Positions 1,454 through 64,000 of a stretch of 64,000 bases of DNA are shown in pieces (position 1 is the stretch's first letter; each line of letters starts with the position of its first letter). The stretch is from assembly GCA_044892525.1 (NCBI GenBank), contig CM097885.1:126480001-126544000 (forward strand), given 5' to 3'. The notes beneath the pieces were generated by a model that made no database searches, had not been told where the DNA came from, and worked only from the letters and a program-made list of their open reading frames with translations. This stretch comes from Schmidtea polychroa. Taxonomy: Eukaryota. The position numbers and the translations under genes are program-made.

Positions 1454-2254
1454 TTATTTAAACCAAGGATGATCTAATAACTTGTCAAAAAATAATCTGT
1501 CATTTGGTCGAAATTTAGTACATTCTGACACAAATAATGCAGCTGACTTAGAGCAATCTAAAATAGGAGGAATAACGCATTCCATTGTTTCTTCTTCAGT
1601 GTCAAATGCCATCTTAAATTCAAAACAACTGTATAACAAACATCCGAAATTAAATGTTAAACTTTGCTTAATGTTATATGAATGATCCAAAAAAGTCTCG
1701 GGACTTCTGAACCCAGTTGTACCTCGATTACTCATTGAAAATGGAGTGTGTGATTTATCATAAAGCATATATTCAAAATCAATTAGTTTAACTTCCAAAG
1801 TGCTTTTGTTAACCATTATATTTTCTGGTTTGATATCTAGATGATAGAATCCAATTTTTGACATTTCATGTACTATCGAAATTGTATTTTTTAAAATAAC
1901 TTTTAAATATTTTTCATCGTTTTCCTCTTCAATAAAATAAAATAAATCTAACCAATCTTTATCAAGAAATTCCATGACTACTGTTGACCACATATCTCCA
2001 TCGTGATAATCTAATAGTTTTGGAACATATTTATATTTTGTTAATCTTTTCAAAAAATATAATTCATTCGGAATATAGTTTTTGCATTCTTTATCATAAA
2101 CAAATGTGTTATAACTATGTTTTTTAGTAAATGATTTCAAAAGAACTTTCTTACCATCTTTATCTAAAGCTCGACAGACATTTCCTTTTACAGAGCTCCA
2201 AATTTCAAAGTAATCATAATAAGTTTGATTATATAAACTGTCAACTTTTTCCAT
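1454..2254 (-). CDS. Intronless PIM-like/CAMK-group Ser/Thr protein kinase (divergent)
   Basis: 266-aa ORF with VLLK, NELYFLK (alphaC Glu), HLDIKPENIMVN, VKLIDFE, GTTGFRSPE, FNFGCLLY and a C-terminal RL..DKLLDHPW; the motif order matches PIM-family kinases. Confidence 0.85.
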   Translation of the reverse strand: MEKVDSLYNQTYYDYFEIWSSVKGNVCRALDKDGKKVLLKSFTKKHSYNTFVYDKECKNYIPNELYFLKRLTKYKYVPKLLDYHDGDMWSTVVMEFLDKDWLDLFYFIEEENDEKYLKVILKNTISIVHEMSKIGFYHLDIKPENIMVNKSTLEVKLIDFEYMLYDKSHTPFSMSNRGTTGFRSPETFLDHSYNIKQSLTFNFGCLLYSCFEFKMAFDTEEETMECVIPPILDCSKSAALFVSECTKFRPNDRLFFDKLLDHPWFK

Positions 2255-9869: not shown

Positions 9870-10600
9870 TAGATGATAGAAATACACTTAGCACAAAAAC
9901 AGAAGTCTCCACTCGAAATTTTGGTTTAGAATTCTACTGCGAAAAAGTAATAGATTTCATAATGACATTACGCGTGAAATGTAGACATAATCGACGATGT
10001 TGAACTATGTCACAAAGACTATATTAAATTATTTAGAAGAGAGACACAGGTCAGTCTTTGATATGTATAAAGTTTGCCCGATTATCATATGCCAATTCAT
10101 AATCAGATCAAACTGATCACAAGATAACTTGAAACACCATGTTAAAAGACAAATTCTTATCGCGTAAAACTGTACAAGTCAACCTCTTATCATAGTACCA
10201 CTCTTATTGGTAATGCACTATTGATACCGGAAATATTTTGGTTTAGTCTCGAGAAATTAAATGATAAATAACCTGATTTTCACCCAATAACTATACCTTA
10301 ATTTTCGATGTCTTAGATTATACGAATAAAAGAAAAAAACCACCATTAGTTAAATGGAAATATACCTCGCAAATAAGTAAAATGCAAATAACGACTCAAT
10401 AACTCAAATTTTAAATGATTTTTTTCTTCAACACCGAAGAAAATAATAATAACTTAATAATAACTGACTATTAACTAAAGACAATGTTGTAATTGATACT
10501 ACAATTGATTCTATTCATATTGCTATATATTTTTTGTTAATTAATTTAATGACGCCACTCAATCACCGACATTTATAGTAGACACTAATACCTTAGGAGT
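9870..10600 (+). mobile_element. Highly decayed retrotransposon-like coding remnant
   Basis: Stop-riddled frame containing CTIDTG (~10220), resembling a retropepsin D-T-G motif; no other motif recognised. Confidence 0.3.
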
Positions 10601-11305
10601 GACAATAACAATGAAGGCTCACTCATGAGGGAAGAGCTAAGACTGAATTTGGGAAGAAGATAGGGCACGAATAAGCGATCTGACAATAATTGGGTCAACG
10701 AATAAAATAATACTAATAATATTATAATAATTTTAGCATCTAATAAATTTTCCTTTTTTTCCTAGGCGCTAGTGTGATCAGAACCTTCGACTTCACTACA
10801 GGGCTATGGCAGCACACATCTAATGCACAGTGCCAATGTTGCTTGCGACGGGTAATTAGTGATAATAAAACATTATGTGTTGGGTTAGGGTTGGCAAAAA
10901 TTGTTGATTATATAGAAAGTTTTGAACATAAATTTCTTTTCACATCCAATTTTTTTGTACTATTTATATATATGTTGGGCTGAGTCGGAAAATCAATTTG
11001 GGAAATTAGGAAAATAAAATAAGCAAGAGGCTAAAGAAAAACAAAATAAAATAAACAAATTACGAATAAAATAGAATAAGATATAAGAAAAACAATAATT
11101 AGGAAATAAGAATTAAAACAAAAATAAAAATAGAAAATTAAAATAGGACAATAGAAGAACGGATAAAATAACGTAAAATTCAATAAATAATAAGGAAATT
11201 AAAGAAATAAATAGAAAATATAATAAAAATAAAGAAAATAGGAAGAAATAACCAAAAACAAGAAAAATAAATTAAAGCAACAAAATTAAGCGGTACTCAA
11301 TTCTG

Positions 11306-11339
11306 ATTGGTCCGCACACACAGAAAATTAATATATAAA
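11306..11339 (+). promoter_or_regulatory. Candidate Pol II promoter (reverse CCAAT plus TATA) upstream of element A
   Basis: ATTGG at 11306-11310 and TATATAAA at 11332-11339, upstream of a GTAAGC donor-like site at 11568. Motif match only. Confidence 0.3.
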
Positions 11340-11361
11340 CACGCACAAAAATCATAAAATT

Positions 11362-11430
11362 ACTGTTAATCTAAACATTCTACAGGTAAGAGTACTTCTA
11401 AATAAGACTGTTAATCTAAACATTCTACAG
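11362..11430 (+). repeat. 24-nt perfect direct repeat enclosing a 45-nt GT..AG segment
   Basis: ACTGTTAATCTAAACATTCTACAG at 11362-11385 and 11407-11430; 11386-11430 begins GTAAG and ends CAG. Confidence 0.85.
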
Positions 11431-11778
11431 ACCTACAATAACCGACAAGGATAATCAACAATCAAAATCATTTTCTAGGAGCATTCAGAGATCGAAATCG
11501 AGACAACTAATTACCGAGAAAGTACCGAATCTATTTCCGACTCAGCCGACAACACTACAAGCATTACGTAAGCAGATTTTTGTTTGAAAGTAATAGTAAT
11601 CATGAGATGTTCGTAAAAGTAAAATTAAATGAATTATGATTTTTCTTTTCGGTTGATCCCTATAAATATTTTTCTATGATTTTAATGATTAAATAAATGT
11701 TTTAATGATAAATGCGTTGTTTTAGATATATTTATGAATTAGTCGGAAAGTCTATAATTTTATGATTGTGCATTTTAT

Positions 11779-11915
11779 GAGAAACGTGGAGTTGAGACGT
11801 TTCATGTCATGGTGTGAGGGGCCTTCGGGAGCTCAGCGGCGGACATGAAACGTTTCAATCACGCAGCTGACTTGGGCCGAAAAGTGGGGCTTCCTCACGG
11901 GTCCGTCGCTGAAGG
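11779..11915 (+). ncRNA. Conserved structured RNA module (5' module of element A), family unknown
   Basis: 17-bp helix 11792-11808/11842-11858, inner CC(UUCG)GG hairpin, and a 30-nt block 11886-11915 identical in copy B; copy B shows compensatory changes in the long helix. Confidence 0.7.
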
Positions 11916-13292
11916 TTCCTAACTTAGTTGAAACAGTGGACCATAGTTATGTGAGAGATTTCAATTAGAAAATTTAGCTACGTTCATGATTCACAGTGAT
12001 TGAGGCGGCCACCACCAATTTTTCGTATCTGGAAAACTGTTATCCACCATAAGTCTGATTTTTAGCGCTAGTTCAGGCGACCGTAATCTAGAAATTCAAG
12101 TTCTTCAACCCTCATCACATCTTGAGATTCAACCATCTACTCGATTTTTCCGAAAGAATCATCTTAATTCGAGCATTTTACTCCAATACCTGATAATTAG
12201 CTGATAGGGTAGTATGAACAATTCATAAGAAAAAATCAAAACACAAAACTTCCAATGTAACAACACTTTATTTTTGAAAACGCTAGTTAACCAAAATATA
12301 TTTACTTACCAAATATGACCGAAAATTAGCCGTCGGAGCAAGATTCATGGTCGTCTTTTAGATAAGTAGTCCGATTCCCTGTCGTAGAATATATCCAACC
12401 TTAGAGAAAGCCCCGCAGTCATAAATCCAAATTCTGCAGGCGAAAGCGAGTAAACGGAGATGAACTGACAAACACATAATGTTTCAGATATTGTCACCCG
12501 GTAGAATCTCATCCAACTACCCATGTGTGAATGCGAAATACAATTGATATCGACAGTAGACACAGATAAGCATCCATGAGAATAGCACAGGACTACCAGC
12601 TTATCATGATCAGCGAGAGTATTTGTTGTAATATGTGTGCGACATGAATTATTAGATAGACAGCAGCCGGTGAGTGGAATCGATAACTATCACCGTGCAG
12701 TACACCGAACCGACCAATAAATCACTGACTTTTATCATGGTGCGAAAGTGTCTCGTGACACTGATAATGAGTAACAAATTAATCCGCTAGTCGACTTGGG
12801 GGTCAACTTTCTACTGCAAATTATTCTTGTAATGTTCACGTTTTTGACCACAATAATAATAAATAAACTGCCCTGCGTATATTTAGATCCTCGGTACGAA
12901 AGATATTAAATGGGAGAAAGAAATGCCAGTTGGGGAATAATTCGTCTCGACTATGTTAACTATAATAGTCTTGGGTCGAGGTCTAATAATGAATTGAGGG
13001 CTTAAGGGGGAATTCGGTGAGTATTGAATTCATTAATAGTACAATTGCCACCCCGGTCACGGATTTTGCATTTGTCAATACAATCGTGCATAATTATGTA
13101 AATAAAATTATGTAATAAATCTAGCAGTAACGAATTATTTACCTGAGATTGTAAGTTTCTTACTTGTCAGTATGGTCTCTTTATTTTGTTGTAAGTATCA
13201 AATATGAATAAATAATCTGTAGAGTAGAGTGATGTCTTCATAAATGCCGTATATTTGTATATCAATTTTCTTTTCTTTTCTAGCTAATTGTC

Positions 13293-14042
13293 ATGCTACC
13301 GAATAATCGACCAGCATTACGTCCTTGTTTCTCCTGCGCCGATAAAAACTCTATTATCAAGGATCTGCAGGACCAGATCGGTCGATACAAGAAGAAGATC
13401 GACGAGCTGGAAGGCACATGGTTCAGCCCAGTGCAAATGAAGGAGGTTCGAAAGAAATTACATCGCAGTGAGCATTGTCGGGATGCCCTGATTTCTGAGA
13501 GCCGTTCCCAACGGAGCTTGATAAAGGAGCAATCTGAAGCGCTCCACAAAGTATATTTACAAGCAGCAACTACGAGGCAATTAGTCAGTATACCCATTCA
13601 CGAAGCGGACAATGTTTTCCCAATGCATCACGACACCTCGTTTAAGTCGTCACCTCCGGCCAAGAAGTCTTGTCGGGAATGTGTTGAAGCCGACCTCTCC
13701 CCCAGGCATCCAGATATCGTGTTACCCAAAATCAGTAAGGTGCCAATCGCCGGTACCTCTACCTCGGCGGTACCTCCGATTAGTCAGGTGGCACCAAAAC
13801 CCAAGCGACGGCAATTGTCGAGAGCCGATCGCAAGAGAAAACAGCGAGAGCGCGCGGCCGCCAAGCACAACGAACAGCCAGCGGAGAATCCTATTAGTGT
13901 TCAGCACCTTCCGACGACAATTGATCTGACCATTGGGGTCCCAGGGCGAATTATCTCCGCCGCTGGAGTGACCTGGGAGGAAAATGCCTCCGAATTCTTT
14001 GATTTGGAAGAGTTGTTGGCCGACACTGAGTGGGAAAAATGA
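13293..14042 (+). CDS. 249-aa protein of unknown family (CxxC, coiled coil, CxxC, basic NLS-like, acidic-aromatic C terminus)
   Basis: Open 249 codons; ~85% aa identity to the 62150 (-) ORF over residues 11-95, with many synonymous differences; Y-tract-TAG acceptor 9 nt before the ATG; AATAAA at 14164. Confidence 0.85.
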   Translation: MLPNNRPALRPCFSCADKNSIIKDLQDQIGRYKKKIDELEGTWFSPVQMKEVRKKLHRSEHCRDALISESRSQRSLIKEQSEALHKVYLQAATTRQLVSIPIHEADNVFPMHHDTSFKSSPPAKKSCRECVEADLSPRHPDIVLPKISKVPIAGTSTSAVPPISQVAPKPKRRQLSRADRKRKQRERAAAKHNEQPAENPISVQHLPTTIDLTIGVPGRIISAAGVTWEENASEFFDLEELLADTEWEK

Positions 14043-14323
14043 GAACTCTCTGTCCGTTCAACCCGCTTCGAAAGACGAATATCAATGTTTCTTTTCTTAT
14101 TTTCTCATCATTCATGTATAACTGTGCGTTGTAAATTATCTACGTTTTATCCCATTGTGAGGAAATAAATCATGTTTGTTACTAATGTTCTTATTAATTT
14201 TGTAAAGTTTATGACTTAGATTTTAGTCATTCTAATCAATATCAGTAGAAATCTTTACAGGATCTATAAGTATCTTCTAAGTCCTGGTTGTTAGTTTGAA
14301 CGAACGGTCTGATGATATGAGTA

Positions 14324-14590
14324 GACGTAAGTCCTTCTATCGGCAGTCAAGGGAAGGAAGTCGAGGCCTCAGTGAGGAGTAGTCCGAAGGTAGGGGCTCA
14401 CCTGCTTACTGGCGTTTCGCTGACATAGTACATTACCAACGTGAAGCGATTCACGGGTACTATGCTGGAATATAAGTTGTGCGGGGTACCGCTCGGAGTT
14501 ACCAAGGGAATGGATAAAACAGACAAAGTAGACCATCATCTCCTAGGCGAAAAGTCAAATGGTAGAGGTGAGTCCGAGTAGTGCCCCAGC
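14324..14590 (+). ncRNA. Conserved structured RNA module (3' module of element A), family unknown
   Basis: GAC(GUAA)GUC and GUGAA(GCGA)UUCAC GNRA hairpins; CAUAGUAC/GUACUAUG helix is CGUAGCAC/GUGCUAUG in copy B; the first 26 nt are identical in both copies. Confidence 0.65.
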
Positions 14591-15318
14591 ATATACTACC
14601 CAACAATACCAATGGTAATTAGTTACATGTATCATCATGATAAATTTAGATGTGAGTTTTTGTTGTAATTATCAAAATAATGTCATAATTAGAAATTTTA
14701 AACTACCCACTACCAGTACACCACACAAATTGTCCAATTAACTTACATAGTGCCGTTTCATATACATATGAAATAGCGACGAGATACACACTAACCATAT
14801 TAATTGGTGCAAAACCTATGTGAGAACATTTAGCTTCGTTGTAGATTCCACTCGCGTCCATTTTCAACTTCATTCGTGTAAAATACAGTGTAATAGAATA
14901 TATTTTCGTAGAAATTGAATTTCATTTTTTTTCACCAATTCATTTTACCCAGTCAAGTCAAGTAACTAGATAATGGCTTTGGAAATCGTAATGCAAGAAA
15001 AATTATATTTTGAAATATTTTTGATTTAAACTTAAGCCTATAAATAAAAGTATAAAAAGACAGAAATGGAATTAATTTTTAAATGGTAAAATAAAATATA
15101 TAATGAAATAAAACTTACATATTTGATATTTATTAGGAATTCTTATAAATTTATTTTCATGAGTATTTTGAATAAAAAAATTAATTGTTTTGTTTTGATA
15201 TGTTAACATAAATTTTTTAAAGTTTTAATTTTTATATTAAATAACAAATGGCGATTTATTAATATATATTTATTGTAGTCTTTAATTAATTTTATTGTGA
15301 TAAATATTTAGATATTTC

Positions 15319-18300
15319 ATGCCCTGCAAAAGAAGCCGTAGAAGTTCCAGCGTAAGTGATGAAAGTGTATCTATCACAGATTATAATGAAGATTCAATAC
15401 AGTCTGCTTCAAGTAGTATTTCTACAAGGAAAAGGCGCAAGACTATTGATTCTCGTTTAGAAGTAATTTTGAGAAAATTATTTAAATCAAATTAATTTTT
15501 AATTAAAATTAACTCTAAAATAGATTGGCCACTGTCAAGAAATTTTAGATAAATTGAGGAATGCCAAGGCTGAAGATGGTCACTTGATAGCTGATTCATT
15601 TATTAGATTACCGAACAAACGAACAGCATCTGATTATTATGAGATCATCGATACGCCAATTGACATTATCAAAATTCAGTCTCGCATTAAAAACGATGAA
15701 TATGAAAATTTCTTTGATTTTCAGATAGACATTGAACAATTAGTTGAAAATGCTAAAACATATCATTCACCTTCATCACTTGAATATCAAGATTCGATTC
15801 TATTGTGGAATGCATTTGAACAAGAAAAACGAAATATTTCCATAAAAGCTGATGTAAAGGCAGAAAGCAGTAATGATATTATTTCAAAGTAAGTTGAGAA
15901 CATTAATTAATTACTTAGGCGCTGAAGGTCGACCTAGACGTAGTAGAAAACGAATAGCTATATCTATTGATGATGGAATGAGTGATCAAATTTCTCTTAC
16001 AACTTCTGAAGATTCTAGAAATACGTCAGAAATTAGTAGCAACTTTTCCGAAAATCCACTTGAAGCTTATTTTACTTCCATCGTTACTCAAAAAACCGAA
16101 GATGGTAGAGATGTGGTTGGAGCTTTCACTTTTATACCATCAAAGACTGTGAGATTTGCTAATTAAATTAAATTACTTTCATAATAATGTTAAAAAACAG
16201 TTATAGTTATTGAAATTGCATTATTTACTTAAGTTTTTATTCTTATTTTTCCTTGTCATTATAAGAATAATCATTAAAAATTTATTTGTCCATTGATTTA
16301 AATTCTTTTTTTTTCAATGAAAATGGATCAAGAAATTACAATAAATAAATTAATTATTATCATAAAAGTAAGATGGATAAATTTTGGTCAGTAGATTAAA
16401 TATAAATGAAGGTTTATGAAAATTTAATTTTTTAATAATATCAGTGGCTAATTAGTATAATGAATATTTGCATTATTCCTCACACCAAGTTCTGTACCAA
16501 ATAATATTGAATAAATTAATTTATTTATATGAACACCTAGGTTAAGTTAATGAGAAAAAACATGAGAAAAAGTACTGAATTTTAAAAGCCTATAAAAGAT
16601 GAGTTTCTTGAAGCCTGGACAACTTCAATGTTTCAAGAAGGGACTTTTCCTTTTCATATGTCAATAGATTGTTAAAATTAAATCAATTTAAGGTGTTGTC
16701 AGTTAATTAACCCGATTGAAATTTTATAATGAGAAATTATGGTATTACATATGACAAATAATAGCCCGGATTATTTTTATTCATTTTTCGTAACAGGAAC
16801 TGTAAACATAAAACAATTTCATGTCTCATGACAAATTCCATCAAATACCCATTACTGTGGTAAATCTCGACTGACTTGATTCCGTTTCCTTTGCTATTCC
16901 TCAGACACATGTTAAAAATGTTAAAAATTGTCGCGTTATATTCGGGCTAATGCGGTAAATGTAATGATATATTATTGTCTGAAAATGAAGAGAAAGAAAA
17001 TTGAATAATTATATTTTCGCAGTAGTTACTTTTGAAACTTTTAATTTATATAATAATTTTATTAATTTAAAAAATTTGTTGTTTGCTAAATTCAATGTAT
17101 TAAATCAATGATGAGCAACATGTGGCGTAATAAGAAAATATATACAAAAAATAAACTGTTAAATAGTAACATTAGTTGTCAATCTATATATTTATAATAG
17201 ATATGTACAAGTATTTTTGTATTTTTGAAAACGATGTGACTCTGCATTCTTTTTTAAACTGTGGGTTTCCAGAGAACCGTAAATATTAAAACTATGAGTT
17301 AACATGCGCCGACCCACCGAGCTTGATGCGTTAAACAATGAGAGAAATTGAAACACTTATCTCTGTACCTCTTATGGCCATTGAGCAAAACAATCTTTAA
17401 ACCAAGAGAAACATATATGATGTCTAGTTGGTTCTACGTCTACTCTAATTACATTGCATCACCCGATATTCTGAATTAAATCAATACACCTGTTTGCAAT
17501 GAATAAAAGCATCTATTTAGTAACAAAGTAGGTATAATATTATTAAGAGAATGTATATGCGGCTCGAACGAAACAAACCAATTAAATTTCCAAAAAATAT
17601 TTTTTGTAGTTTTTGTCTTTTTAAAATTATGTATAAAATTATATACCAGGCGTATCCACAGTATCAAGAAGTTATAAAGGAACCAATCGATCTTAGAACA
17701 ATAGCAAAACGTATTAAATCAGGCGTTTATTTGAGTATTGACGATATCGAAAGCGATTTACAGTTAATGATAAAAAATGCGAAAATATTCAATGAACCCA
17801 AATCGGAAGTATTTCAAGTAAAAAATTTTTAAACCAAAATGTCAATTTGTACTCAATTGGATTTATGAAATTAGAATGCAGTGGAATTGCAGAAAATATT
17901 GAAAATGAAACGAACCGAAATGGAAACCGGGGTGAAAACTCAGAAAGCAAAACGGTACTAGTGTTAATTCACTAATTTGAAATATGAAAGTAAACTTATC
18001 TAGAGGACGTAAACGGAAGACTCCACTTAATTTGACGGAGAAATATGCAAATATGGAGTCACCAAAAGATAGCGATGAATTTGACAGCGAAGAACCAGAG
18101 GATAGTTTGGAAAATAGTGTTGATTATGACGAAGAGTTGAATATTCCTCCGGCTGATAGTCGATTTCCACAATGGCAGTTGTATAAAACCATTACCGGTA
18201 TTACTCTGAGTAACGGGAACAGCCTATGTGCTCCGTTTATGAAACTGCCATCTAAAAAGTATTTTAATTGGTTAATACAATATGTGATAAAATGAACTAG

Positions 18301-24300: not shown

Positions 24301-27300
24301 TCCAATAACTTGAGATTGAGCCATGATTGAATTGGAAACATTGGATAATTGTTCAACGCTTTGGCTAGTAAAAATTTGAATTGTGTTGATCTTTTTAAGA
24401 GCTCGATTAAATAGAATATCATATTCATAAGTTAGCAAGTTTATCTTTTTATCGCTAATGTCATAAATGGTTTCAGATAATTTAATTCAGGTAAGTTCCT
24501 CTTTTGTCATTTCATGATTTACAGCAATTAAATCGTTGATTTGCAATCGTTTTGATAAACTTTGAAAAATTGAATTAATGTCAATTAGAAATTTTCCATT
24601 AATAATTTGCAACGATCTTGTTGAGTCACGCAGATACAAAACACATGTCTACTTTCAAATATTACCTTCGATATATTGCTCATTGAAATACGACATCAAA
24701 CATTCATTATCTTCCATATTTCACTAAAGCCGAAAATTCAAAAATTTACATAAAAGATATCTTTTAAACAAAAATTCCTCGAACCAAACTCGAATTACCA
24801 GAATTAAAATCAATTTTCTAAATCCAAATTAATATCAAAATCTACAATAAAAAAAATAGCAACCTACTTCTCGCGCACACTAACAAGAATCGGTTTAACC
24901 ATACCGCGCGCACAGACGCGATGCCAAAAGCACCAAACAAACTGCCAGTCAGAGGTAAATGCTATTCCCCCTCTNNNNNNNNNNNNNNNNNNNNNNNNNN
25001 NNNNNNNNNNNNNNNNNNNNNNNNNNNNNNNNNNNNNNNNNNNNNNNNNNNNNNNNNNNNNNNNNNNNNNNNNNNNNNNNNNNNNNNNNNNNNNNNNNNN
25101 NNNNNNNNNNNNTGCTTTATCAATGTAGTATTGATTCATTTAGACAGGAATTTATGTTTATATAATATGTTTATAATCATTTTCTCCTGCATCTTTATTC
25201 ACTTTCTGAATTAAATTCAAAAATCTCCGTAAGCCAGTAACTAGAGTTGCAAGTATCTCTAGTAGTTGGCCACCATACACTGTAGGGGAAAGTACCTTTA
25301 AGTTTATATATAATGTAGTTCAATTTCTCCAATTCTTAAATATCCGTCTCTAATTCTTTAAAAGTTGTTCTATTATTTTATTATATAACCATTTTCGTAG
25401 AAATGCTAATATAAAATGGAAATATATTTTTAGAAATTTAAAGACAGTGACATTTATATATGCGAATCCAAATATTCTGTGATCGATAATCGTTTCAAAA
25501 AATTAAAGGTTGGATTAAATCTAGTTGCTGAATCTAAATAAAAAGAGAATTTAGAATTTGACTTACAAGAATAATGCAATAAAAGATCATTTTATTATCC
25601 GTGAAGATCCATTAGTTCTCCAGCGTACATATTCAACAGTTGCTACTGAAACTGTAAAACACGAATCGAATGAATTTATGTTTGTTTTGGAGAATACCAA
25701 AGAAGTCTGCCAATTCAATATATTAAAAAATTAGAAATTAATATTGTAATTAGAGTGTTCTTCAAGAAGATCGATCAGGAACTGAGAGTTGTGTATACTA
25801 TGATCAATATATATGTGACAATGGTTTCAGCGTCAAAGTTGGTGAGTAATTATCATTAACAATAATGCATGAATATCTAACCTCGAATAGGAGATTATGT
25901 TTATGTGAAGGATTCGTCAAGCAAATTACAAATAGTTAGAATTGATCAATTATGGAAGAATGTGTTGTTAGTAAAGAATTTTTACATTATTAAATTTTTA
26001 ATAAATTATTAAATTAAAAAAAAATTTAATTGAAAATTTTTATCCAATAAACGAATAAACGAATGAATAAATAGATTTTTGTTAAGTTGCCTATATATTG
26101 CTACGCGATAAAGACAGTAAATATAAAATTTGACAATCATTTAATTTTAATTGACAATATAACATTTTTTAAATTTCAATATTATCTTAAAATGAATTTT
26201 TTCCTATTGTGTGATAGAAATTATCCCATTTCTAAACTGCTACAGTATAAGTTATAATATATTTAATATTATTATTGATTTATATTGTGTCATAACAGTA
26301 ACTTGATTTGATATCATTTTTTCAAAGGATTCTTATTTATTTGTATATTAAATTTAATTACTTGATTAAGCTTTAACCCTTTCCAGCCCAAATTTTTTCA
26401 AAACAAAAAAAAATATATGCAGTAAGTAGGTACCAAAACTACTTATTTTATCATAAAAATATTTTACTTCATTTTTTTTGTTGCCCCCTTAGAAAAAATC
26501 AGTATGATTCCATTTGGCAACATTGGGCACATAGGTACCATACGTAAGATGGATAGATGGTAAAAATAAAATGCATTTTTCTTTGTTGTTACTAGTTTTT
26601 ATTGTGATATATTTTAAAACAATTTTTTTCTTTTGCAAGACAAAGTGCAACTTTACATTTATCACATTGCGTTCTCGAGTATGATGTTTTACATAATCGG
26701 CAGCGCTGTTTTTGTTCCACATGACTTGGCCAATGTCCTATGCCATCGTACTGAACATCTACAGTAGGAGTTATTGTTGTTACACGTTGTTTTTTTGGTA
26801 TACTGGGAACCGTATCTGAAGGTCTTCCTCGTTTTCGTTCTGTAGACTTGCCAACTAACAACAGGCCATTCGCAATTTCTGCTTGAAATTTTATAAGTGG
26901 CATATGTTTATTGCCATTCTGTTGGCAGTGTCGTCTATACAAAAGCCAAGAATTAACGATACAAATATTTATGAAGTTAAATATTATTCGTAAATATAAC
27001 CTTTTGCCCTTTATATTTATACGCTAGAGTTCTACGAGCATATCGTGAAGATCGACACCTCCCATAAACATATTGTATTCTTTTACAATGGCTGGTCGTT
27101 GGATGTGTACATATTTTTTGGAAGCTAATGACCATCTTTTGATGGTATCAAATGGTAAATGCCCTACATAGTTCGATGCCAAATGAACTGGTTTGTTATC
27201 TAGCCATTTTGTCACAGTAATGTTATTTGTAACGTCTGTTCTGAAGTCAAACGATCCTCTGCCTCGTCGTTTTAGAATGGAGTCCGCTTCTAAATCTATG

Positions 27301-30300
27301 CCAAGCATACGGCATACACGCACTGTACCAGTAGCCAAAAAACTTTTTTCATTCAGTGCAACTAATAATTTATGAGATGTGAATCAGTTGTCCATGAACA
27401 CTTTGAAATTTTTATTTGGTTCTAAATTTTCCAACAAGCGAAGAACAATGTGGCCACTTATACCCAAAGTACTCTCAGTTTTTGCGGTTCCTTTTCCAAC
27501 ATAAATTTCGTAGTCATATATGATACCACTTGCCCCTGCACGGGCAAATACTTTGATGCCCCACTTGTGGGGTTTATTCCTTATATATTGTTTCAGAGAG
27601 TTTTTACCTTTGAAAGGTATCAATATTTCGTCAATTGAATTGAATTCTTCAGGTTCAATCTTACCCATATTATACTTCACCTGGTTTAGAAATGGCCTAA
27701 TTTTAAACAATTTGTCGTGGGCTGGATCGATTCTTGCAAGGGCTTTGTTGTTATCATTGAAGTGTAAAAATGTTCTAAGTTTATCGAATCTATTACGAGG
27801 CATAACACTTGCTATTTTGTCATACCTAGTTTCAGCCATCCAATACATCCGATAACTAGGAACTTTTATTATTCCACTAAGTACCTGAATTCCTATAAAT
27901 TGTTCTATTTCATTCGGACTTGTATTAATTGATGTACCTGATTTTTGTACAGAATATAAATTTGTTTGCTCGGCAATGTTGTGTATAATGTCATTGTCAA
28001 TAAACATTTTAAAATACTGATACACTGATTTATCATCGTGTGGTGGATTTGAAAAATTTAAATTAAAATTTGTATCCACCGTATCGATTTCTTTTTTACG
28101 CCATGAACATGGTCGAACAGAATGTGCAGGTACATTTGGAGTAATATTTTCTAGGTCACTTTCACTTTCTTCTTCCTGGTTCGAAATATCTTCTTCGTCG
28201 GAATCGTTACCACTTGTAGTTGGTCGCTGCTCATCTATCGGCTCAGAGAAATGTTGCTGCAATAAGTCCTCTTCTAGATCATCATCTGACATTTCACTAC
28301 CAGAATCCTGAATCATACGATAAGCTTCTTCAGATGTAAGGGTGTTTAGATTTATCCTTTTATTGAAAGACATCTGAAAAAAAATTATTTCAAACGATAA
28401 ATATAAGAACAGAAGCAAATAGGTGAACCTAAATTAAATCTCAGACAAATTCAGGCATTTAGTGAGTAATATAATCTATAAAAACTTAAAGTTTACCAGA
28501 ATTATAGTTCAACATAAGAAGTAGGCCAAGTGCCCAAAGATTCCAATTGGAATCACAAATTCAATAGGTTATAAAATTATTATAAACATATATTTACCTT
28601 TTGTTCTTGCAATATCACAAACACTAAGCTTTTCTTGAAGTAAATCAATTTTTATTTTAGATAAATAATAACGAAACCACTTATAAAACAACACTTTTTC
28701 TTCGATGTGCGCAACATATAGGTTATGTGAGAGCAGGCTTACAAATGTCGTTACTTTTCTGACAGCTGATACAAATTTAGTGAGATAAAAATTGTGCCAA
28801 CTGTTAAAAACATATCTTACTATAGTTCTCACTAGTTACTGCCAACCGTTTTGGTAGTAGAGAGAAAAAAACTGAGTTTTTAACTAATGATTCCATTTGG
28901 AATCACTGGGCTGGAAAGGGTTAATAAATGTACGTTCATTAAATTTCAATTAGGCATCAACTTAAAGCACGTAGAATAATTAAAATTTGTCGAATAACTA
29001 TTTGAGTGCATGATATTTATTATTATTATTTAGTAATGTTTGATTATTATTTTTATTATTTAATTTGATCATTATTTTTAATAATGTTTTATCACTTTAT
29101 TATTTATTATGCTTATTAATTATTATTTTTAAACAATTAAATGATAATTTAAGCTTTTTGCTGCGAAAAATATATTTAATAAAAATGAAAAATTGCAATG
29201 TTTACTTAAGTTTTTATTCCTTTTTTTTCTCTGTCATTATAAGAATAATCATTCAAAATTTAATTTTTTATCTGTCGATTGATTTAAATTCTTTTTTTTC
29301 CACTGAAAATGGATCAAGAAATTACAATAAATAAATTAATTATTACCATAAAAGTAAGATGGATAAATTTTGGTCAGTAGATTAAATATAAATTAAGGTT
29401 TATGAAAATTTAATTAATTGAATTTAATTTTTTAATAATATCAGTGGCTAATTAGTATAATGAATATTTGCATTATTCCTCACACCAAGTTCTGTACCAA
29501 ATAATATTAAATAAATTAATTTATTTATATGAACACCTAGGTTAAGTTAATGAGAAAAAACATGGGAAAAAGTACTGAATTTTAAAAGCCTATAATAGAT
29601 GAGTTTCTTGAAGCCTGGACAACTTCAATGTTTCCAGAAGGGATATTTCCTTCTCATATGTCAATAGATCGTTAAAATTAAATCAATTTAAGGTGTTTGT
29701 CAGTTAATTAACCCGATTGAAATTTTATAATGAGAAATTATGGTATTACATATGACAAATAATAGCCCGGATTATTTTTATTCATTTTTCGTAACAGGAA
29801 CTGTAAACATAAAACAATTTCATGTCTCATGACAAATTCCATCAAATACCCATTACTGTGGTAAATCTCGACTGACTTTATATTAGTATTTTTTTAATTT
29901 AAAATGATCATTTTTTTAAAATAATGTTTTATTACTATTTATAATCTATTATTTATTATTATTATTATTATTTCTTGGTAGCATCATAAATTAATAGTTC
30001 AACAAGTAAATGATAAAATAATATTTTCAGTATATTATTTTATTCTTTATTTTATTCGTTGACTCAAATTAAATTGACTTATCACGATTACTTATTTTAC
30101 ATTTTTAAGAACTGGTTGAAATTGCAAATAATATTAGATAAAAATAACATATTAAATATTTGGCAATGAAATCTCAATCATAGTAAATGTATAAGATTTT
30201 AATAAAAATGATCACCTTGATATAAAAAATGTTTATACACTTAGTAGACAATGCATAAATTTGTTGAAACCGATTTGTGAAAGTATTGAAATTTTACTAA

Positions 30301-34512: not shown

Positions 34513-36499
34513 AACATACTTTTTTAATTTATTATTTGTACTTTTAATATAAATATATGTGCACTTTTGTATTGATATTTATTTAATATTTTAATAAAAT
34601 ATATCAATTTGTACTTTTATTTGTATTCGCGTTTTGTTGTATAATTTATTTGCTTGTTATTTTAGTAATATATTTAAATATCTTCATAATGTAATGAGAA
34701 TGTTATTGTTAACCGATTAAATGGAATTAGTGAACAACACTTTAATTATTCACATTATACAACGGTTTAGAAATTATTTCTAATAATATAAAATTAGAAG
34801 AATAAAAATTTTTAATGCTTATATGACGCTATTTTTATTTAAATTAAAAAGCCAATATTAATATTTGTATGTATGATATACGGAACCAGTATATCAAATC
34901 GAATCAACACCAATGAAACCGCCTAAAGATACATAAATTTGGCTGGAGAAGGCAAGATTCTAACAATATTGAAAAACAAGACACTAATAACGAGTCGCAG
35001 ATTGGCAAAGAATGTCAAAGTAGAATGTGCCTTCGGCATAAAAGCTAGTCTAAAAAAGACATCCTTCAAAGAAATCAAGACAAACTAATTCGCCAAAATC
35101 TGAGATCATATAGAGAATAATTGGGATTTGTTAATCAAGCAAAAGCCAACAGAAATAAAAGAGTGTATGAGCAATCTCCAAGATAATGCGATTTGGTAAC
35201 TAAAACCATCAGATTAATTAGACGATACGGGAGATTGATGATGAAAGGGCAGATCTCAAAATCACTATACGATTACCTAGTAAGGAACAAGAAATCCTGA
35301 CAAATAAATGAACTAATAACAATGATAAACGAGACAATAATAGAAGAAGCCCGAGCAAATAGCAAAGATGAAATAATAGATCTGGTCATGATATATAATA
35401 AACATATCTTACAATTGGATAACGACACCTTAAGCGAATTAGGTATATGGGATGATGAACAAACGATAAAAATCATGCTGATGGATGAGCCATTGACCAA
35501 AAAATACTCTTAACATAAAGATGTTTGATATATTGTGGTTTATTAGTGGTTGATTTCCCGACTGGATCTTGTACATCAGAAATGGAAAATGGAATGGATA
35601 TAAAGATCAAATAACTAATATTGCAGGATGACAATAAATTTGAAAAATTTGAGATGAATAGAAACAAATGTAAACAGAAATCAAATCTAGTAGCAAGCTG
35701 TAGAAAATGAAGCGTCAAGGAGAAATCACCGGAGCAGATAAGGAGGAAAGCAGTAAGAATCATTACAGTATTAAAACAAAATATTATTATAATTTATTAA
35801 TATTCTTACAAATATTTTCTAAATGATAGTGATAAAGTTTACATTTTATTCTCTGAGTTTTTCAGATCTATGGAATTTATGCTCGTTGGATGGTTATTTT
35901 ATTTTTTATGTGTAATTTTTATGAGTTCCTACAACTAATCTCGCGAGATGTGGCTTTGGTTTCCGGTTTTTTTATTATTTATTGGTTTCTTTATGATCTT
36001 TTTGAAAATATGGCGTCCTAACAGTATAGTTAGCAAATATCCTGTCTAGGGAAGTTCGACTTTAGAATTTCACTCTCAGTAAATGATCACATTTTTTTAC
36101 GAATATACTCACAACGAGAACTATCCCACATACACACTAACAATTACTACAAAAAATTTTCGAAACGAAAAAAAGAGTAGATCCTTGCTCAAATTTATGA
36201 AATTGACGGTAATTAACATCAATTAAGGAGGACCATAATTAAGAATGAACAAATAGCGAAAAAATGAATGCGTAATAATAAATCAACGTAAGACCTTCTA
36301 CAGGCAGCTATGAACCCGAAAATGAGAGTGCAATAAGCAGTTATATCAGTGGAGCTCATCTGCTCATTGATTTTCAACCTCTGTGTATATTACCACCATA
36401 GTTTCTGCCATGGATACACGGATGCCAAAAGTAAAATAGTCATGAAGGCGTTTAACGAATAATCGACGATAAATCTAACAGTTACCCTAGAGAAGTAAA

Positions 36500-60336: not shown

Positions 60337-60854
60337 TTATTGTTTTTATTTTAATATAATTTTCGGTGATTTTTGAAATTAATTATTAGTATTCATAAAA
60401 TTTTCGTAATAATATCTATAACTTGACATTTACTGACAACGGTTTCTTATTGGTTAATAATAATGATAATACTATAATTTTTCTTGATAAAAAAGTCTAA
60501 ATATCAAATGGTTTGTAATCAACATAATATAAACTGGCTATTTTCTTAAAAGATCAAAGAAACGGTATTTTATTTGAGAGATTGAGTACAGAAAATAAAT
60601 TCTACTCAAAAATTGTGGTCCAAAAATAGATATCGGAATATATTGCTTATACATAGGTATTTTTATTCATTTTTACTAAAAAGCAACTAAACGAAATTTT
60701 TGTACAATTGTACTTTAATACAATTTAGCTATACAGTAGATAAAACATGCAAAATGAGTATGAAAGATGTTTTTGAGGCATTAGGGTAGCTCCTCCAATG
60801 TTTAGCAAACAAATGATGCGAGAATTGCATTTGTTCCTCGTGTTGGCGGGTGAC

Positions 60855-61114
60855 TACCCGGATGACCCCCTTCATTACCGCTTTCAGTCCAGAGGATGAA
60901 TGCCCCATATCGATTACGCTCGTCTTGATTCTGGTCATTGCCGAGCAGGACCCGTACATAATCTACCCTCCAACATAGCACCCGTGAATCGCTTCACGTT
61001 GGAACTGTGCTACGCCGGCGAGACGCCAGTAGGCAGGTGAGCCATCTCCTTCGGACTACTCCCTACTGAAGCCTCGACTTCCTAACCCTGACTGCCGATA
61101 GAAGGACTTACGTC
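60855..61114 (-). ncRNA. 3' structured RNA module, copy B
   Basis: Reverse complement aligns to 14324-14590 with the hairpins preserved. Confidence 0.65.
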
Positions 61115-61406
61115 ATTTCATTTTGTCACCCATCGCAAGATTTCTAGCTGGAATTACCAATTGACCAATATTCCTCATTTTTCCGAAAAACTCTCAATGC
61201 TATTTACAAGTTCATATTATTTTCTAAGTTCAACACACAAGATAACGCATACATAAACGAAAAACTTTTATTATTAAATTTACTACACAAACACCTAGAG
61301 GATTTATACAAGGAATTTTACACGAACTGAATAACACCAAGGTAGAAAACGACAACAGAAAAGTTCGATCCGCTACGGAGAAGGAGGCCATTCTCCGGGG
61401 AAATCC

Positions 61407-62150
61407 TCATCTCTCCCACTCCGAGTCGGCGAGTAACTCGTCCAGATTAAAGAACTCGGCGGCGTTTTCCTCCCACATCGCCCCGGCGGCGGAGATAACT
61501 CGCCCGGAGATCCCGGTTGTTGGGACGACCACCGTTAGATCACTATTGTTGCTGACTGGAGCGATGATTGACGATGTACACTACTTGACAGACGCCCGTT
61601 CCCGTTGTTTCCGTTTGCGTTCGGCCCGAGACAGCTGTCGACGCTTAGGCTTTGAGGAGGTGATCGTTTGTATGGTTGATGAGGACGTGAGATTTAGCTG
61701 GACCTTACTGGTTCCGGTGAATACAATCTCTGGGTCTTTAGGAGAGAGCTCGGATTCTACACATCCATGGCAAGACTTCGCGAGTGGAGACGAAAACTTG
61801 ACAGAAGTATCATGGTGCGCTGGGAAGAGATTGCCGGCTTCGTCAATTGGGATCTTCGCTATTTTTCTAGTGGTCGCCGCTTGTATGTATAGTTTATGCA
61901 GTGCTTCCGACTGCTCTTTTATCAGGCTCCTCTGTGCTCGACTTTCGGAAATGAGAGCATCACGACAGTGCTCGCTTCGATACAATTTCTTTTGGGTCTC
62001 CTTCATTTGCGTGGGACTAAACCATGTCCCCTCCAACTCATCGATCTTCCTTTTGTACTTTCCAATTTGCGCTTGTAGATCCCTGATAACTGAATTCTTG
62101 TCCGAGCAAGAAAAGCAAGGTTTAAGAATGTTGTTGGTACTTGAAGACAT
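61407..62150 (-). CDS. Paralog of the 13293 ORF; 189 aa to an in-frame TAG, 247 codons if read through
   Basis: TAG at 61581-61583; the same frame continues to ..SGRVISAAGAMWEENAAEFFNLDELLADSEWER* (TGA 61407-61409), matching the C terminus of copy A. Confidence 0.8.
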
Positions 62151-63695
62151 CTTGAATAGCTATGAAGAGGAAATGCGAATAAAATCAAACTAAGTCAAAT
62201 GTGAGACATCATCATCTAGTCACACTCATACCATACTGATCATAGATTATCATACTGACAAAACGAGTTTATTAGCCTGAAGAGATTTCGTTACCCTACA
62301 GATCTTGTACGCTTGGGGTCATTATTTATACGAGAGTGGATCATTCATGCAAGATTTTACCGAAGGAAAGTAAGGTATTATCCTGGATAAGGGAAATTAC
62401 AGGTTGATGAAATTACAATTTAATCAATTTACCTGAAAACAGTACCTAACATTTAAAGAGAGTTTAAATTAAATTATAGATTTACCCCAAGACAAATAAT
62501 TTGGATGTGTAGATCTTATGCATGGATAGGCGATTTATCTTTAAATTAATTATTCAACATAAATAAGACTCTATCAATTGCTCTGCAATTATTTGTTTGC
62601 GATAAGTAAAAGTTTGTTAATTAATTTGCACTTGTTTAGTTGTGAGAAAATCAAAATGATTAAAACAAAGTTGAATATTTAAATGAATTTAACCACGTGT
62701 ACCCAAAATGTCTGTCTGGCCGCTATCTATCATTTCTGATCGGTGAGAAAATCGGGTGACTGTCAGTAGTATGTTTCAGTGAATTATGTTTCAGCTGACG
62801 CGTCAGGTTGGATTTCCTGTGATTAACAGTCTGTATAATCTACATATTGCGAGTAGCCTCTGTGATTATTCTAAAGCGCATGGCGCATGAAAATTTTCTC
62901 TCACCTACTTCTACTTAGTCATAATCGCTGACTGATGTCTTCATGCTCTATGCCATGCCGGTGTATGCATGCAGGTGTATTTTCCCTTATGACATATTAC
63001 ATCACTGACGAACCATGTATCTACCTCAAATGCTGCTGGTTATCTCTCATGGATATTTTGGAAAAACCGGATTTCTACATCATCAATGTTGGAATTAATT
63101 CACGATCCCTCAAATAGGATTTACTAGCTCGTCTCGTGGTCCTCCATCGCTATCAATGTACGCCTGCTACTGCTGTCAAATTGGAGATTTATTACTTATC
63201 CCAATGCTGGATTTTCCACCCGACGGGATGTGGACATTTTATGGTTTACTGGGTAAACAATTATTCTAATAAATTATGTTTTAGGGAAATACATTTTTAC
63301 TGATTGGAGTTATTCGCTTTTATTTTTAATGATTACTTAAACCTATTTAATTACGTGATTTCATACAATTTCATCTTTGAGAGGACATATAGCCGATGGG
63401 AATAGCGATTTCGCAAAAATCGTTAGTCGAAAATTTCAAGATTAAATTTCTAGCGAATTCGAGAACTATGACAACTATGGCATACATAGCACTACCAAGG
63501 TTGGACGGTTTTTTAACGAAAGACTTGCCTAGATCTACTGGATGATAAAGAAGAATTTTAACTTGATCAGACGCTGTTATAATACGCTAGTGCGACACCC
63601 TCAATCACTGCGCGAACATATCAAAATTTCTCCTATTGATCGATTCATTCTCCTATCCTACTTCCTCGTATGAATTTTCATAGAATTTAGTCACT

Positions 63696-63835
63696 CCTTC
63701 AGCGACGGACCCGTGAGGAAGCCCCCACATTACGGCCCGAATCAGCTGCGTGATTGAAAAGACCCCATGTCCACCGGCTGAGCTCCCGAAGGCACCTCAC
63801 ACCATGACATAGAGTATCTCAACACCACGTTTCTC
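63696..63835 (-). ncRNA. 5' structured RNA module, copy B
   Basis: Reverse complement aligns to 11779-11915; identical 30-nt block; long helix kept by compensatory changes. Confidence 0.7.
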
Positions 63836-64000
63836 CAAAATTTTAAATATCATAAAATCAACAAATAGTAAAAATTCCTTTCATTCAAATAAAATATTTA
63901 TTACCAATTTACTAAAACATTTAATTAAGTAAAACCTTCAAATCAAACGAAAAGAGAAAAATGATTATTAAATTTAGACTACTATAAATTCATAAATATA

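What the first reader, a model, noticed from the sequence alone, without database searches (positions are those of the whole stretch)
11620..14590. Unclassified ~3 kb element: two structured RNA modules bracketing one small ORF (copy A)
Seen: copy A (+) and copy B (60855-64000, -) are colinear. Three islands are strongly conserved (5' RNA module, ORF, 3' RNA module), while the 1.4-1.5 kb spacer keeps only short motifs (CAGTGATTGAGG 11994/63599, ATCCATGAGA 12572/63045). No RT, transposase, recombinase, TIR, LTR or TSD is visible. Inference: selection acted on both RNA folds and the protein as one unit, which fits a non-autonomous RNA-mediated element, a satellite/viroid-like or viral endogenised unit, or a protein-plus-ncRNA gene family. 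I cannot match it to a described family.
Basis: partly seen in the sequence, partly recalled or inferred. Interest (0 to 1): 0.92.

Follow-up and report, generated by a model that had tools for sequence, protein, structure and literature searches.

The report
Orphan gene flanked by structured RNAs
Two diverged copies of a 2.8 kb unit in an AT-rich animal genome each carry a folded leader RNA, a probable intron, a small arginine-rich protein gene and a folded trailer RNA; nothing in the unit matches any catalogued RNA, protein or mobile-element family.

Summary
Copy A (+, 11757-14590) and copy B (-, 60848-63858) share only three islands: a 5' RNA module (84% identity), an ORF (67% nt, 68% aa) and a 3' RNA module (86%). 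Synonymous sites between the ORFs are saturated, so the modules are under strong constraint and the loss of similarity in the spacer is expected.

Both modules fold better on the ORF-sense strand, and every substitution in a predicted stem keeps the pair. A covariance model found a third, solo 3' module at 36285-36429, which raises double-sided compensatory pairs to 12.

The spacer looks like a 5'-UTR intron. The acceptor AG lies exactly 9 nt before the ATG in both copies, and a conserved block ends in a shared GT.

The protein has a helical hairpin, an arginine-rich motif and an acidic tail. Its only relatives among ~15 billion proteins are about 15 chimeric gene models fused to unrelated host genes.

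The unit is a GC island (ORF GC3 0.55 against 0.20-0.32 for neighbours). Searches found no RT, ribozyme, LTR, TIR, TSD or viral relative.

Best reading: a spliced RNA-protein-RNA unit of a dispersed, compositionally foreign family, probably selfish. How it is copied is unknown.

The parts
11757..11777 (+). Copy A: short conserved AT-rich stretch just upstream of the 5' module (possible core promoter, TATA-like)
   Evidence: The blastn match starts at 11757. TATA-like letters lie about 25-30 nt before the first conserved base of the module. Further upstream the similarity is not significant.
11778..11918 (+). Copy A: 5' RNA module, non-coding, two domains (long hairpin with a UUCG-capped apex, plus a second hairpin)
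   Evidence: MFE -60.9 kcal/mol, z -3.6, against -42.6 on the opposite strand. 48 consensus pairs, 2 compensatory and 4 wobble changes, 0 broken. Stops in all six frames and 1-nt indels between copies. No Rfam family.
11961..12005 (+). Copy A: conserved block after the module, ending in the shared 12-mer that holds a GT (candidate 5' splice site at 11996; an alternative GT lies at 11951)
   Evidence: Local alignment z 5.4, 0 of 300 shuffles. Sequence read.
11996..13283 (+). Copy A: spacer, a putative 5'-UTR intron (polypyrimidine tract and AG at 13282-13283, 9 nt before the ATG)
   Evidence: No nucleotide or protein similarity to the spacer of B. No excess RNA structure. The acceptor region is conserved (z 3.2) and the AG-to-ATG distance is identical in both copies. 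GC 36% against 25-28% in the flanks.
13293..14042 (+). Copy A: intact ORF of 249 aa (helical hairpin, arginine-rich motif, acidic tail)
   Evidence: AF2 helices at 15-40, 46-98 and 177-192. Family relatives. GC3 0.54.
14043..14323 (+). Copy A: non-conserved AT-rich linker between the stop codon and the 3' module (contains an AATAAA)
   Evidence: z -0.4 against shuffles. GC 31%. Sequence.
14324..14590 (+). Copy A: 3' RNA module (core 14324-14472, extension closed by a long-range stem); it begins with 5'-splice-site-like letters
   Evidence: 66 consensus pairs, 6 compensatory, 8 one-sided, 0 broken. Sense strand -49.6 against -34.9 kcal/mol. CM R2 177 bits. No Rfam family.
63693..63858 (-). Copy B: 5' RNA module with its short conserved upstream stretch
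   Evidence: No Rfam family.
63599..63639 (-). Copy B: conserved block ending in the shared 12-mer with a GT (candidate donor at 63608; alternative at 63661)
62160..63608 (-). Copy B: spacer, a putative 5'-UTR intron (AG at 62161-62160, 9 nt before the ATG)
61407..62150 (-). Copy B: ORF in one frame throughout, broken by one in-frame stop (no frameshift)
   Evidence: dN/dS about 0.2-0.3 in the C-terminal part. GC3 0.55.
60848..61114 (-). Copy B: 3' RNA module (core 60966-61114 plus extension)
   Evidence: No Rfam family.
36285..36429 (+). Copy C: solo, diverged 3' module core (about 60% identity) with no ORF and no 5' module nearby
   Evidence: CM R2 30.6 bits, E 4e-6, full length. With it, 12 pairs show double-sided change and helices 4, 6 and 7 are 94-98% paired. 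No ORF, no 5' module, no other similarity.

Best explanation
Each copy is a compact, spliced, RNA polymerase II-type transcription unit. It belongs to a dispersed multi-copy family that is compositionally foreign to this genome.

Proposed anatomy: the transcript starts at or just before the 5' module, which forms a folded, non-coding leader exon of roughly 170-220 nt. The 1.3-1.45 kb 'spacer' is an intron of the 5' UTR. The second exon encodes a protein of about 250 aa with a helical hairpin (likely the oligomerisation part), an arginine-rich motif of the kind that grips structured RNA, and an acidic aromatic tail. About 280 nt behind the stop codon lies a 270-nt multi-helix RNA domain.

Proposed mechanism (inferred, not shown): the arginine-rich protein recognises the folded modules of its own transcript. 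This would form a self-contained ribonucleoprotein that controls the export, stability, packaging or copying of that RNA, which is the logic of Rev/RRE or of retrotransposon ORF1 proteins.

The unit has no polymerase or integrase of its own. If it is mobile it must be non-autonomous. It may equally be a domesticated descendant of such an element.

Shown: the three conserved islands, strand-specific folds with covariation, purifying selection on the protein, the splice-signal geometry, the foreign composition and the dispersed relatives.
Inferred: transcription start, splicing, protein-RNA recognition and selfishness.
For: - Three islands only, with saturated synonymous sites (pS 0.80-0.95) and pN 0.18-0.21.
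- Modules at 84-86% identity are more conserved than the coding sequence.
- The folds favour the ORF-sense strand (-60.9/-59.3 against -42.6/-30.3 kcal/mol, and -49.6/-55.0 against -34.9/-38.9). They contain many G-U pairs, which would be A-C mismatches on the other strand.
- No substitution breaks a pair between A and B. There are 8 compensatory pairs, rising to 12 in the 3' core once copy C is added, against 1-6 in slid controls.
- The modules are non-coding.
- The acceptor AG lies exactly 9 nt before the ATG in both copies after a polypyrimidine tract, and that region is conserved (z 3.2). A conserved block (z 5.4) ends in a shared GT.
- Gene models of relatives also join upstream exons a few codons before the same ATG.
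- Protein architecture comes from AF2 and the family alignment. W43, P46, L66, E69, R71, Q73 and R74 are invariant in 12 sequences, followed by an arginine-rich stretch and an acidic tail.
- All relatives are chimeric models fused to about 13 different host domains. They fall into several subfamilies, with 65-96% identity within a subfamily.
- ORF GC3 is 0.54-0.55 against 0.20-0.32 for all other ORFs in the window. The unit is a GC island bounded by the two modules.
Against: - No transcript data exist, so the start site, the splice sites and whether the 3' module is part of the mRNA are all unproven. An AATAAA lies between the stop codon and the 3' module in both copies, although that is near chance expectation in DNA this AT-rich.
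- No termini, target-site duplications, poly(A) tail or partner element were found, so mobility is not shown.
- A short conserved stretch upstream of the module (from 11757) fits DNA-level duplication as well.
- A and B are each other's closest relatives (80% in the core) and lie 47 kb apart, as local gene duplicates would.
- Copy C shows that the 3' module can stand alone.
- The spacer GC of 36% is unexplained for an old intron.
- Thermodynamic z-scores of the 3' module are modest (-1.5 and -2.1).
- Covariation rests on only two or three sequences.
Confidence: 0.4

Rival explanations
1. An ordinary, lineage-specific host gene family (local inverted duplicates A and B). Its mRNAs carry conserved cis-regulatory RNA structures in the 5' leader and the 3' UTR. 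It is not mobile and not of foreign origin.
For: Intron-like spacer with a conserved acceptor position. Purifying selection on the protein. A and B are nearest relatives of each other and lie 47 kb apart. A short conserved stretch sits upstream of the putative start. No transposon hallmarks.
Against: GC3 is 0.55 against 0.20-0.32 for neighbouring genes even though synonymous sites have fully turned over. Spacer GC is above background. No stand-alone annotated homologue exists among about 15 billion proteins; there are only chimeric models next to many different host genes. A solo 3' module lies elsewhere in the window.
Confidence: 0.3
2. Internal or terminal fragments of a known retrotransposon class (LINE, SINE, LTR, DIRS or Penelope-like). 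Under this reading the ORF is an ORF1/gag-like gene and the 3' module is the RT-recognition tail shared with a partner element. Copy C would be a 5'-truncated copy.
For: The solo 3' module (copy C) lies at the end of an A-rich, strand-asymmetric stretch, as 5'-truncated LINE copies do. Conserved 3' stem-loops with compensatory change are typical of stringent LINE/SINE tails (established knowledge). The relatives are dispersed.
Against: No RT, EN, RNase H, integrase, YR or GIY-YIG signal appears in the unit, in its spacers or around copy C. No LTR, TIR, TSD, poly(A) or simple-repeat tail. No hammerhead or HDV-like ribozyme and no R2 or UnaL2 element hit. The ORF lies downstream of a 1.4 kb non-coding stretch that carries splice signals, which is not an ORF1-ORF2 layout.
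Confidence: 0.12
3. Endogenised copies of an exogenous virus-like or viroid-like agent (for example a delta-like agent or a small nuclear-replicating virus). The UTR structures and a coiled-coil/arginine-rich nucleoprotein would have been captured twice, independently.
For: Foreign composition of both ORFs despite saturated divergence. Coiled-coil plus arginine-rich architecture next to highly structured RNA. In copy B one in-frame stop is followed by a still-conserved in-frame tail.
Against: No ribozyme hit. No delta-antigen or other viral hit in Pfam, PDB sequences, BFVD or PDB folds. No relative in IMG/VR. The 1.4 kb non-coding, non-conserved spacer with a positionally conserved acceptor is unlike a compact viral genome. 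The intact ORF sits next to an unconstrained spacer, which is unlike a decaying endogenous viral element. Relatives sit at many loci.
Confidence: 0.08
4. The two modules are independent small non-coding RNA genes that merely sit next to an orphan ORF.
For: The 3' module occurs alone (copy C). The linker between the stop codon and the 3' module is unconstrained and contains an AATAAA.
Against: The same order, orientation and spacing of all three parts is kept in two copies whose neutral sites are saturated. No Rfam family matches. No conserved upstream promoter block or downstream T-run is evident.
Confidence: 0.05

Closest known systems
Rev / Rev-response-element type systems of complex retroviruses (also Rem, Rex, Rec)
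   Same: A small protein with a helical oligomerisation hairpin, an arginine-rich RNA-binding helix and an acidic/hydrophobic C-terminal motif, encoded by a spliced message of a unit that also carries a large structured cis RNA and an intron.
   Different: No sequence or fold homology. The only Pfam REV signal is a sub-threshold match to the arginine run of one relative. No LTRs and no gag/pol/env. The modules lie in the leader and trailer, not inside the intron. Binding was not tested.
Non-LTR retrotransposon RNAs with structured ends and an ORF1 protein (R2 with its 5' ribozyme and 3' UTR; ORF1-only 'half' elements; SINE/LINE shared 3' tails)
   Same: Sense-strand structured RNA at both ends of a unit, a coiled-coil basic protein with no enzymatic domain, dispersed copies and a solo 3' end copy.
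   Different: No RT/EN anywhere, no ribozyme or R2/UnaL2 Rfam hit, no tail or TSD, an intron-like spacer upstream of the ORF, and no partner element identified.
Delta-like agents (Kolmioviridae) and other viroid-like RNAs that encode one small protein
   Same: One protein of about 200-250 aa with an N-terminal coiled coil and arginine-rich motifs beside highly structured RNA. In copy B a stop is followed by a conserved in-frame extension.
   Different: It is a DNA copy of about 2.8 kb with an intron-like spacer. There are no self-cleaving ribozyme hits and no delta-antigen hit in Pfam or PDB. No rod-like self-complementarity was seen. The protein I had in mind, the delta antigen, did not come back from any search.
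Penelope-like elements (retroelements that keep introns)
   Same: A possible RNA-mediated element that retains a spliceosomal intron.
   Different: No RT, no GIY-YIG, no hammerhead-bearing terminal repeats.
Domesticated capsid-like genes that bind their own mRNA UTRs (Arc, dArc1, PEG10)
   Same: A protein proposed to recognise structured UTRs of its own message. Some relatives carry a PPPY motif.
   Different: No Gag/capsid fold or Pfam hit.

Membership tests
Ribozyme-bearing elements (HDV-like ribozyme of R2/RTE-type LINEs; hammerhead of retrozymes and Penelope-like elements; delta-like agents) | A self-cleaving ribozyme motif in the terminal RNA | tested here: not met
   Rfam 15 cmscan found nothing at gathering score in the whole window. 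At E up to 5-10 on each module of A, B and C alone, no ribozyme family appeared. Pseudoknotted ribozymes can be missed by covariance models.
Delta-like agents (Kolmioviridae) | A protein homologous to the delta antigen | tested here: not met
   No such hit in Pfam at E up to 10, in a PDB profile search at E up to 10, or in BFVD/PDB fold searches.
Delta-like agents / viroid-like RNAs | A circular, rod-like RNA genome | not testable with these tools
   Only genomic DNA is at hand. The spacer shows no excess folding.
LTR, DIRS and Penelope-like retrotransposons | Coding capacity for RT (with RNase H, integrase, tyrosine recombinase or GIY-YIG) | tested here: not met
   Apart from the 249-aa ORF itself, no ORF in the unit exceeds 105 aa. 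The spacers share no protein similarity. Pfam was not run on the spacer pieces themselves.
LTR, DIRS and Penelope-like retrotransposons; DNA transposons | Terminal repeats (LTR, split direct repeats, TIR) and target-site duplication | tested here: not met
   The repeat finder on 10500-15600 returned only AT-rich chance pairs and the internal hairpin. The ends of the unit are not known precisely.
LINE/SINE (non-LTR) | A 3' poly(A) or simple-repeat tail, with RT/EN in the autonomous partner | tested here: not met
   No tail after any of the three 3' modules. No RT-like Pfam hit around copy C.
LINE/SINE (non-LTR) | A 3' structured tail shared with a partner LINE family | tested here: inconclusive
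   A solo 3' module exists, but no LINE carrying it lies in the window. The genome at large could not be searched.
Rev/RRE-type regulatory pair | An arginine-rich motif and oligomerisation helices in the protein; a structured cis RNA in an intron-containing transcript | tested here: inconclusive
   The architecture is present. Homology is absent. Binding and export were not tested.
Spliceosomal-intron-containing nuclear gene | A GT donor, a polypyrimidine tract and an AG acceptor at conserved positions | tested here: met
   The AG lies 9 nt before the ATG in both copies, and a conserved block ends in a GT. Use of these sites in RNA is not testable here.
Any described non-coding RNA family (Rfam 15) | A score at or above the family gathering threshold | tested here: not met
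   The best hits are generic hairpin matches far below threshold.
Any described protein family (Pfam, PHROGs, PDB) | A significant profile or fold match | tested here: not met

The most novel reading that the evidence does not exclude
A previously undescribed class of selfish genetic unit in animals. It would be a polymerase-less 'RNP cassette' made of an arginine-rich, oligomerising protein and two cognate structured RNA domains at the ends of its own intron-containing transcript. It would persist and spread through the genome by borrowing a copying machinery supplied in trans.
Probability: 0.2. Interest if true: 0.85.

Novelty: new variant of a known kind. Interest (0 to 1): 0.62.

Why it matters
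If the reading holds, the window contains two new structured RNA families supported by covariation, each with UUCG and GNRA-type loops. It also contains a protein family that is invisible in current annotation, where it appears only as mis-fused gene models.

Practical consequences:
- It flags a source of chimeric gene predictions in the genomes that carry the family.
- It gives covariance models and a protein profile that can be used to census the family.
- It offers a compact natural case for how an arginine-rich protein and its own folded RNA evolve together.
- If the unit proves mobile, it would not fit any current transposon class.

Tried and rejected
- Rfam, whole window at gathering score and each module at a permissive E-value: nothing.
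- tRNA/tmRNA scan: none.
- Pfam, PHROGs, PDB sequence profile, AF2 with Foldseek against BFVD and PDB: no informative hit. The top BFVD hit is a mycobacteriophage helical protein with TM 0.23.
- Word-indexed protein search with ORF A: none. The profile search was swamped by host domains of the chimeras.
- Fetching DNA of relatives: not on record. All relatives are UniParc-only. I therefore could not test whether relatives carry the RNA modules.
- Scans of viral, metagenome and prokaryote genome collections with module DNA patterns and protein patterns: no relative. The three metagenome matches to a 20-mer are GC-rich bacterial coding sequences, so they are chance.
- Coding potential of the spacers: none shared.
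- RNA structure in the spacers: none.
- Terminal repeats, TSDs and tandem repeats: none.
- Third ORF or third 5' module near copy C: none.
- RT relics near copy C: none.
- 5'-3' module duplex prediction: uninformative.
- Two literature searches: no description of such a unit.
- Identification of the source organism: not possible with these tools.
- Rejected reading: the 5' hairpin as a microRNA precursor. The stem varies with compensation while the loop and flanks are invariant.
Full report
**Setting.** The window is AT-rich animal DNA (25-31% GC in most 2 kb bins). A polybromo-like gene with bromodomain and BAH exons runs from about 15.3 to 34.5 kb on the + strand, and a piggyBac-type transposase ORF sits in one of its introns. 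Copy A lies just upstream of that gene and copy B lies at the right edge of the window. The source organism could not be identified.

**Observation.** blastn of 11000-15500 against the window returns exactly three colinear minus-strand matches:
- 5' module, 11757-11915 / 63858-63696, 84% identity;
- ORF, 13323-14043 / 62120-61406, 67%;
- 3' module, 14324-14469 / 61114-60969, 86%.

A full-length alignment has no other 30-nt stretch at or above 70% identity. Exact 23- and 26-mers from the modules occur only at these two places, with 0 expected. The finding is confirmed.

**Divergence.** Between the two ORFs the proportion of synonymous differences is 0.80 overall and 0.95 in the first 100 codons, which is saturated. 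The non-synonymous proportion is 0.21. Any unconstrained sequence is therefore expected to be unalignable, and the spacer needs no special explanation. The 84-86% identity of the modules does: they are more constrained than the protein. Copy B's reading frame holds one in-frame stop and no frameshift. The part behind the stop stays in frame and has dN/dS of about 0.2-0.3, so the stop is either recent or tolerated.

**RNA modules.**
- Both are non-coding, with stops in all frames and 1-nt indels between copies in the 5' module.
- Both fold much better on the ORF-sense strand. The 5' module gives -60.9 and -59.3 kcal/mol against -42.6 and -30.3. The 3' core gives -49.6 and -55.0 against -34.9 and -38.9.
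- The consensus folds contain many G-U pairs. This argues for RNA rather than a DNA cruciform.
- In the 5' module (48 pairs) all six varying pairs stay paired, two through changes on both sides.
- In the 3' module (66 pairs, including a long-range stem that closes a variable extension) 14 pairs vary, six on both sides, and none breaks.
- Loops include UUCG and GNRA-type tetraloops.
- With only two sequences this is suggestive, not proof. Thermodynamic z-scores are strong only for the 5' hairpin (z -3.6).

**A third copy.** A covariance model of the 3' core found a full-length match at 36285-36429 (+), 30.6 bits, E 4e-6. It is only about 60% identical to A.
- Adding it raises the pairs with double-sided change to 12, against 1-6 in slid controls. 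Helices 4, 6 and 7 are 94-98% paired. The alignment is model-fitted, which favours the structure.
- The small first hairpin is not kept in copy C, but its letters are. In all three copies the module starts with letters that match a 5' splice site, so that stretch is more likely a sequence signal than a stem.
- Copy C has no family ORF, no 5' module and no other similarity to A or B.
- It lies 1.8 kb behind the polybromo stop codon, in an A-rich stretch with no Pfam signal.
- A three-sequence model found no further copies in the window.

**The spacer.** It shows no shared coding potential and no excess structure.
- Both spacers end in a polypyrimidine tract and an AG exactly 9 nt before the ATG (A 13282-13283, B 62161-62160). 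The last 112 nt are more alike than shuffles (z 3.2).
- After the 5' module a 45-nt block is significantly conserved (A 11961-12005; z 5.4).
- Stronger-looking GT sites lie 35-36 nt after the module in both copies (A 11951, B 63661).
- Gene models of relatives also join foreign upstream exons a few codons before the same start codon.
- I read the spacer as a 5'-UTR intron. Which donor is used needs RNA data.

**The protein.** ORF A (249 aa) has no Pfam, PHROG or PDB match.
- AlphaFold2 (12-sequence alignment, mean pLDDT 66) predicts helices at 15-40 and 46-98 (pLDDT above 90 in the core), a disordered linker, a helix over the arginine-rich stretch (177-192) and a disordered acidic tail. Fold searches were uninformative.
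- An exhaustive HMMER search of 1.84 billion cluster representatives found 10 relatives (E 2e-8 to 1e-4). Later searches added five more.
- All relatives are UniParc-only entries. All are chimeric gene models in which the family ORF is fused to an unrelated host domain: neurotransmitter transporter, subtilase, glycine-cleavage P protein, ribosomal L21, CRAL-TRIO, actin, tyrosine phosphatase, DAD, MCM, sedlin, aminopeptidase, ankyrin or LSM14.
- The family shares invariant columns W43, P46, L66, E69, R71, Q73 and R74 (numbering of ORF A, 12 sequences). These are followed by an arginine-rich run and an acidic aromatic tail.
- A and B are 80% identical in the core and 28-41% identical to the others. 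The others form at least three subfamilies with 65-96% identity inside them and different neighbours.
- No DNA of any relative could be fetched, so whether they carry the modules is unknown.

**Composition.** The ORFs have GC3 of 0.54-0.55. Every other ORF in the window, host or transposon, has 0.20-0.32. The whole unit, from the 5' module to the end of the 3' module, is a GC island: modules 51-57%, ORF 50%, spacer 35-36%, linker 31-35%, flanks 25-28%. Because synonymous sites have turned over completely, this composition is being maintained or was acquired elsewhere. It is not what the local mutational regime gives.

**What it is not.**
- No known RNA family and no ribozyme.
- No tRNA-like gene.
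- No RT, transposase or recombinase.
- No LTR, TIR, TSD or tail.
- No relatives in IMG/VR, JGI metagenomes or prokaryote genomes.

**Interpretation.** The anatomy is that of a spliced gene: folded leader exon, 5'-UTR intron, one coding exon and a folded trailer. I hold this at roughly 0.7.

The function is inferred. A protein with an oligomerising helical hairpin and an arginine-rich helix, co-conserved with two structured RNAs on its own transcript, most simply binds those RNAs.

Several points lean towards a selfish, mobile-element-like origin over an ordinary host gene family (0.4 against 0.3): the foreign composition, the dispersed relatives next to many different genes, the absence of any stand-alone annotation, and the solo 3' module. 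Other points keep the question open: the lack of termini, the proximity and relatedness of A and B, and the short conserved stretch upstream.

The fragment-of-a-known-retrotransposon rival stands at 0.12 and the viral or viroid-like rival at 0.08. They have little positive support.

1. The printed output gives codon counts on either side of copy B's stop. This indirectly shows the place of the stop. I give no place in this report.
3. In my reasoning I briefly recalled fragments of known sequences from memory (a ribozyme and a human protein N-terminus).

Noticed in passing
window 36285-36429 (+): A solo, diverged copy of the 3' RNA module core. Its structure is largely kept through compensatory changes. 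It has no ORF or 5' module nearby and lies 1.8 kb behind the polybromo stop codon.
   Followed up: yes
window 14324-14331, 61107-61114 (-), 36285-36292: All three 3' modules begin with letters that match a consensus 5' splice site. The small hairpin predicted there is not kept in copy C, so this may be a U1/splice-donor signal.
   Followed up: partly
window 14800-15320: The first coding exon of the polybromo-like gene (ATG at 15319) has an acceptor-like AG 7 nt before the ATG, and a likely non-coding first exon lies near 14.85 kb. Copy A's 3' module therefore ends under 300 nt upstream of the neighbour's probable promoter, on the same strand.
   Followed up: no
window 34900-38000 (+): An A-rich, strongly strand-asymmetric stretch (AT skew +0.25) around copy C with many short open frames. 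No Pfam hit. It may be a decayed retroelement.
   Followed up: partly
window 1454-2254 (-): An intact single-exon 266-aa protein kinase ORF (Pkinase E 2.5e-26) with very low GC (27%, GC3 0.20). It is not on record as a called gene.
   Followed up: partly
window 26592-28418 (-): A piggyBac-type transposase (DDE_Tnp_1_7, E 2.5e-45) in two ORF pieces, inside an intron of the polybromo-like gene.
   Followed up: partly
window 11362-11385 and 11407-11430: A perfect 24-nt direct repeat, 45 nt apart, about 350 nt upstream of copy A.
   Followed up: no
window 13293-14042 and 61407-62150 (-): Two CxxC pairs (near the N-terminus and in mid-protein) are kept in both window ORFs but are absent from the other subfamilies. 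This may be a lineage-specific zinc site.
   Followed up: no
window 24975-25112: A run of 138 N (assembly gap or masked). Left untouched.
   Followed up: no
L001 204-223, L002 329-348, L003 5725-5744: Exact 20-25 nt matches to the invariant 3' tail of the 5' module in GC-rich bacterial metagenome contigs. They fall inside protein-coding sequence, so they are chance matches and not relatives.
   Followed up: yes
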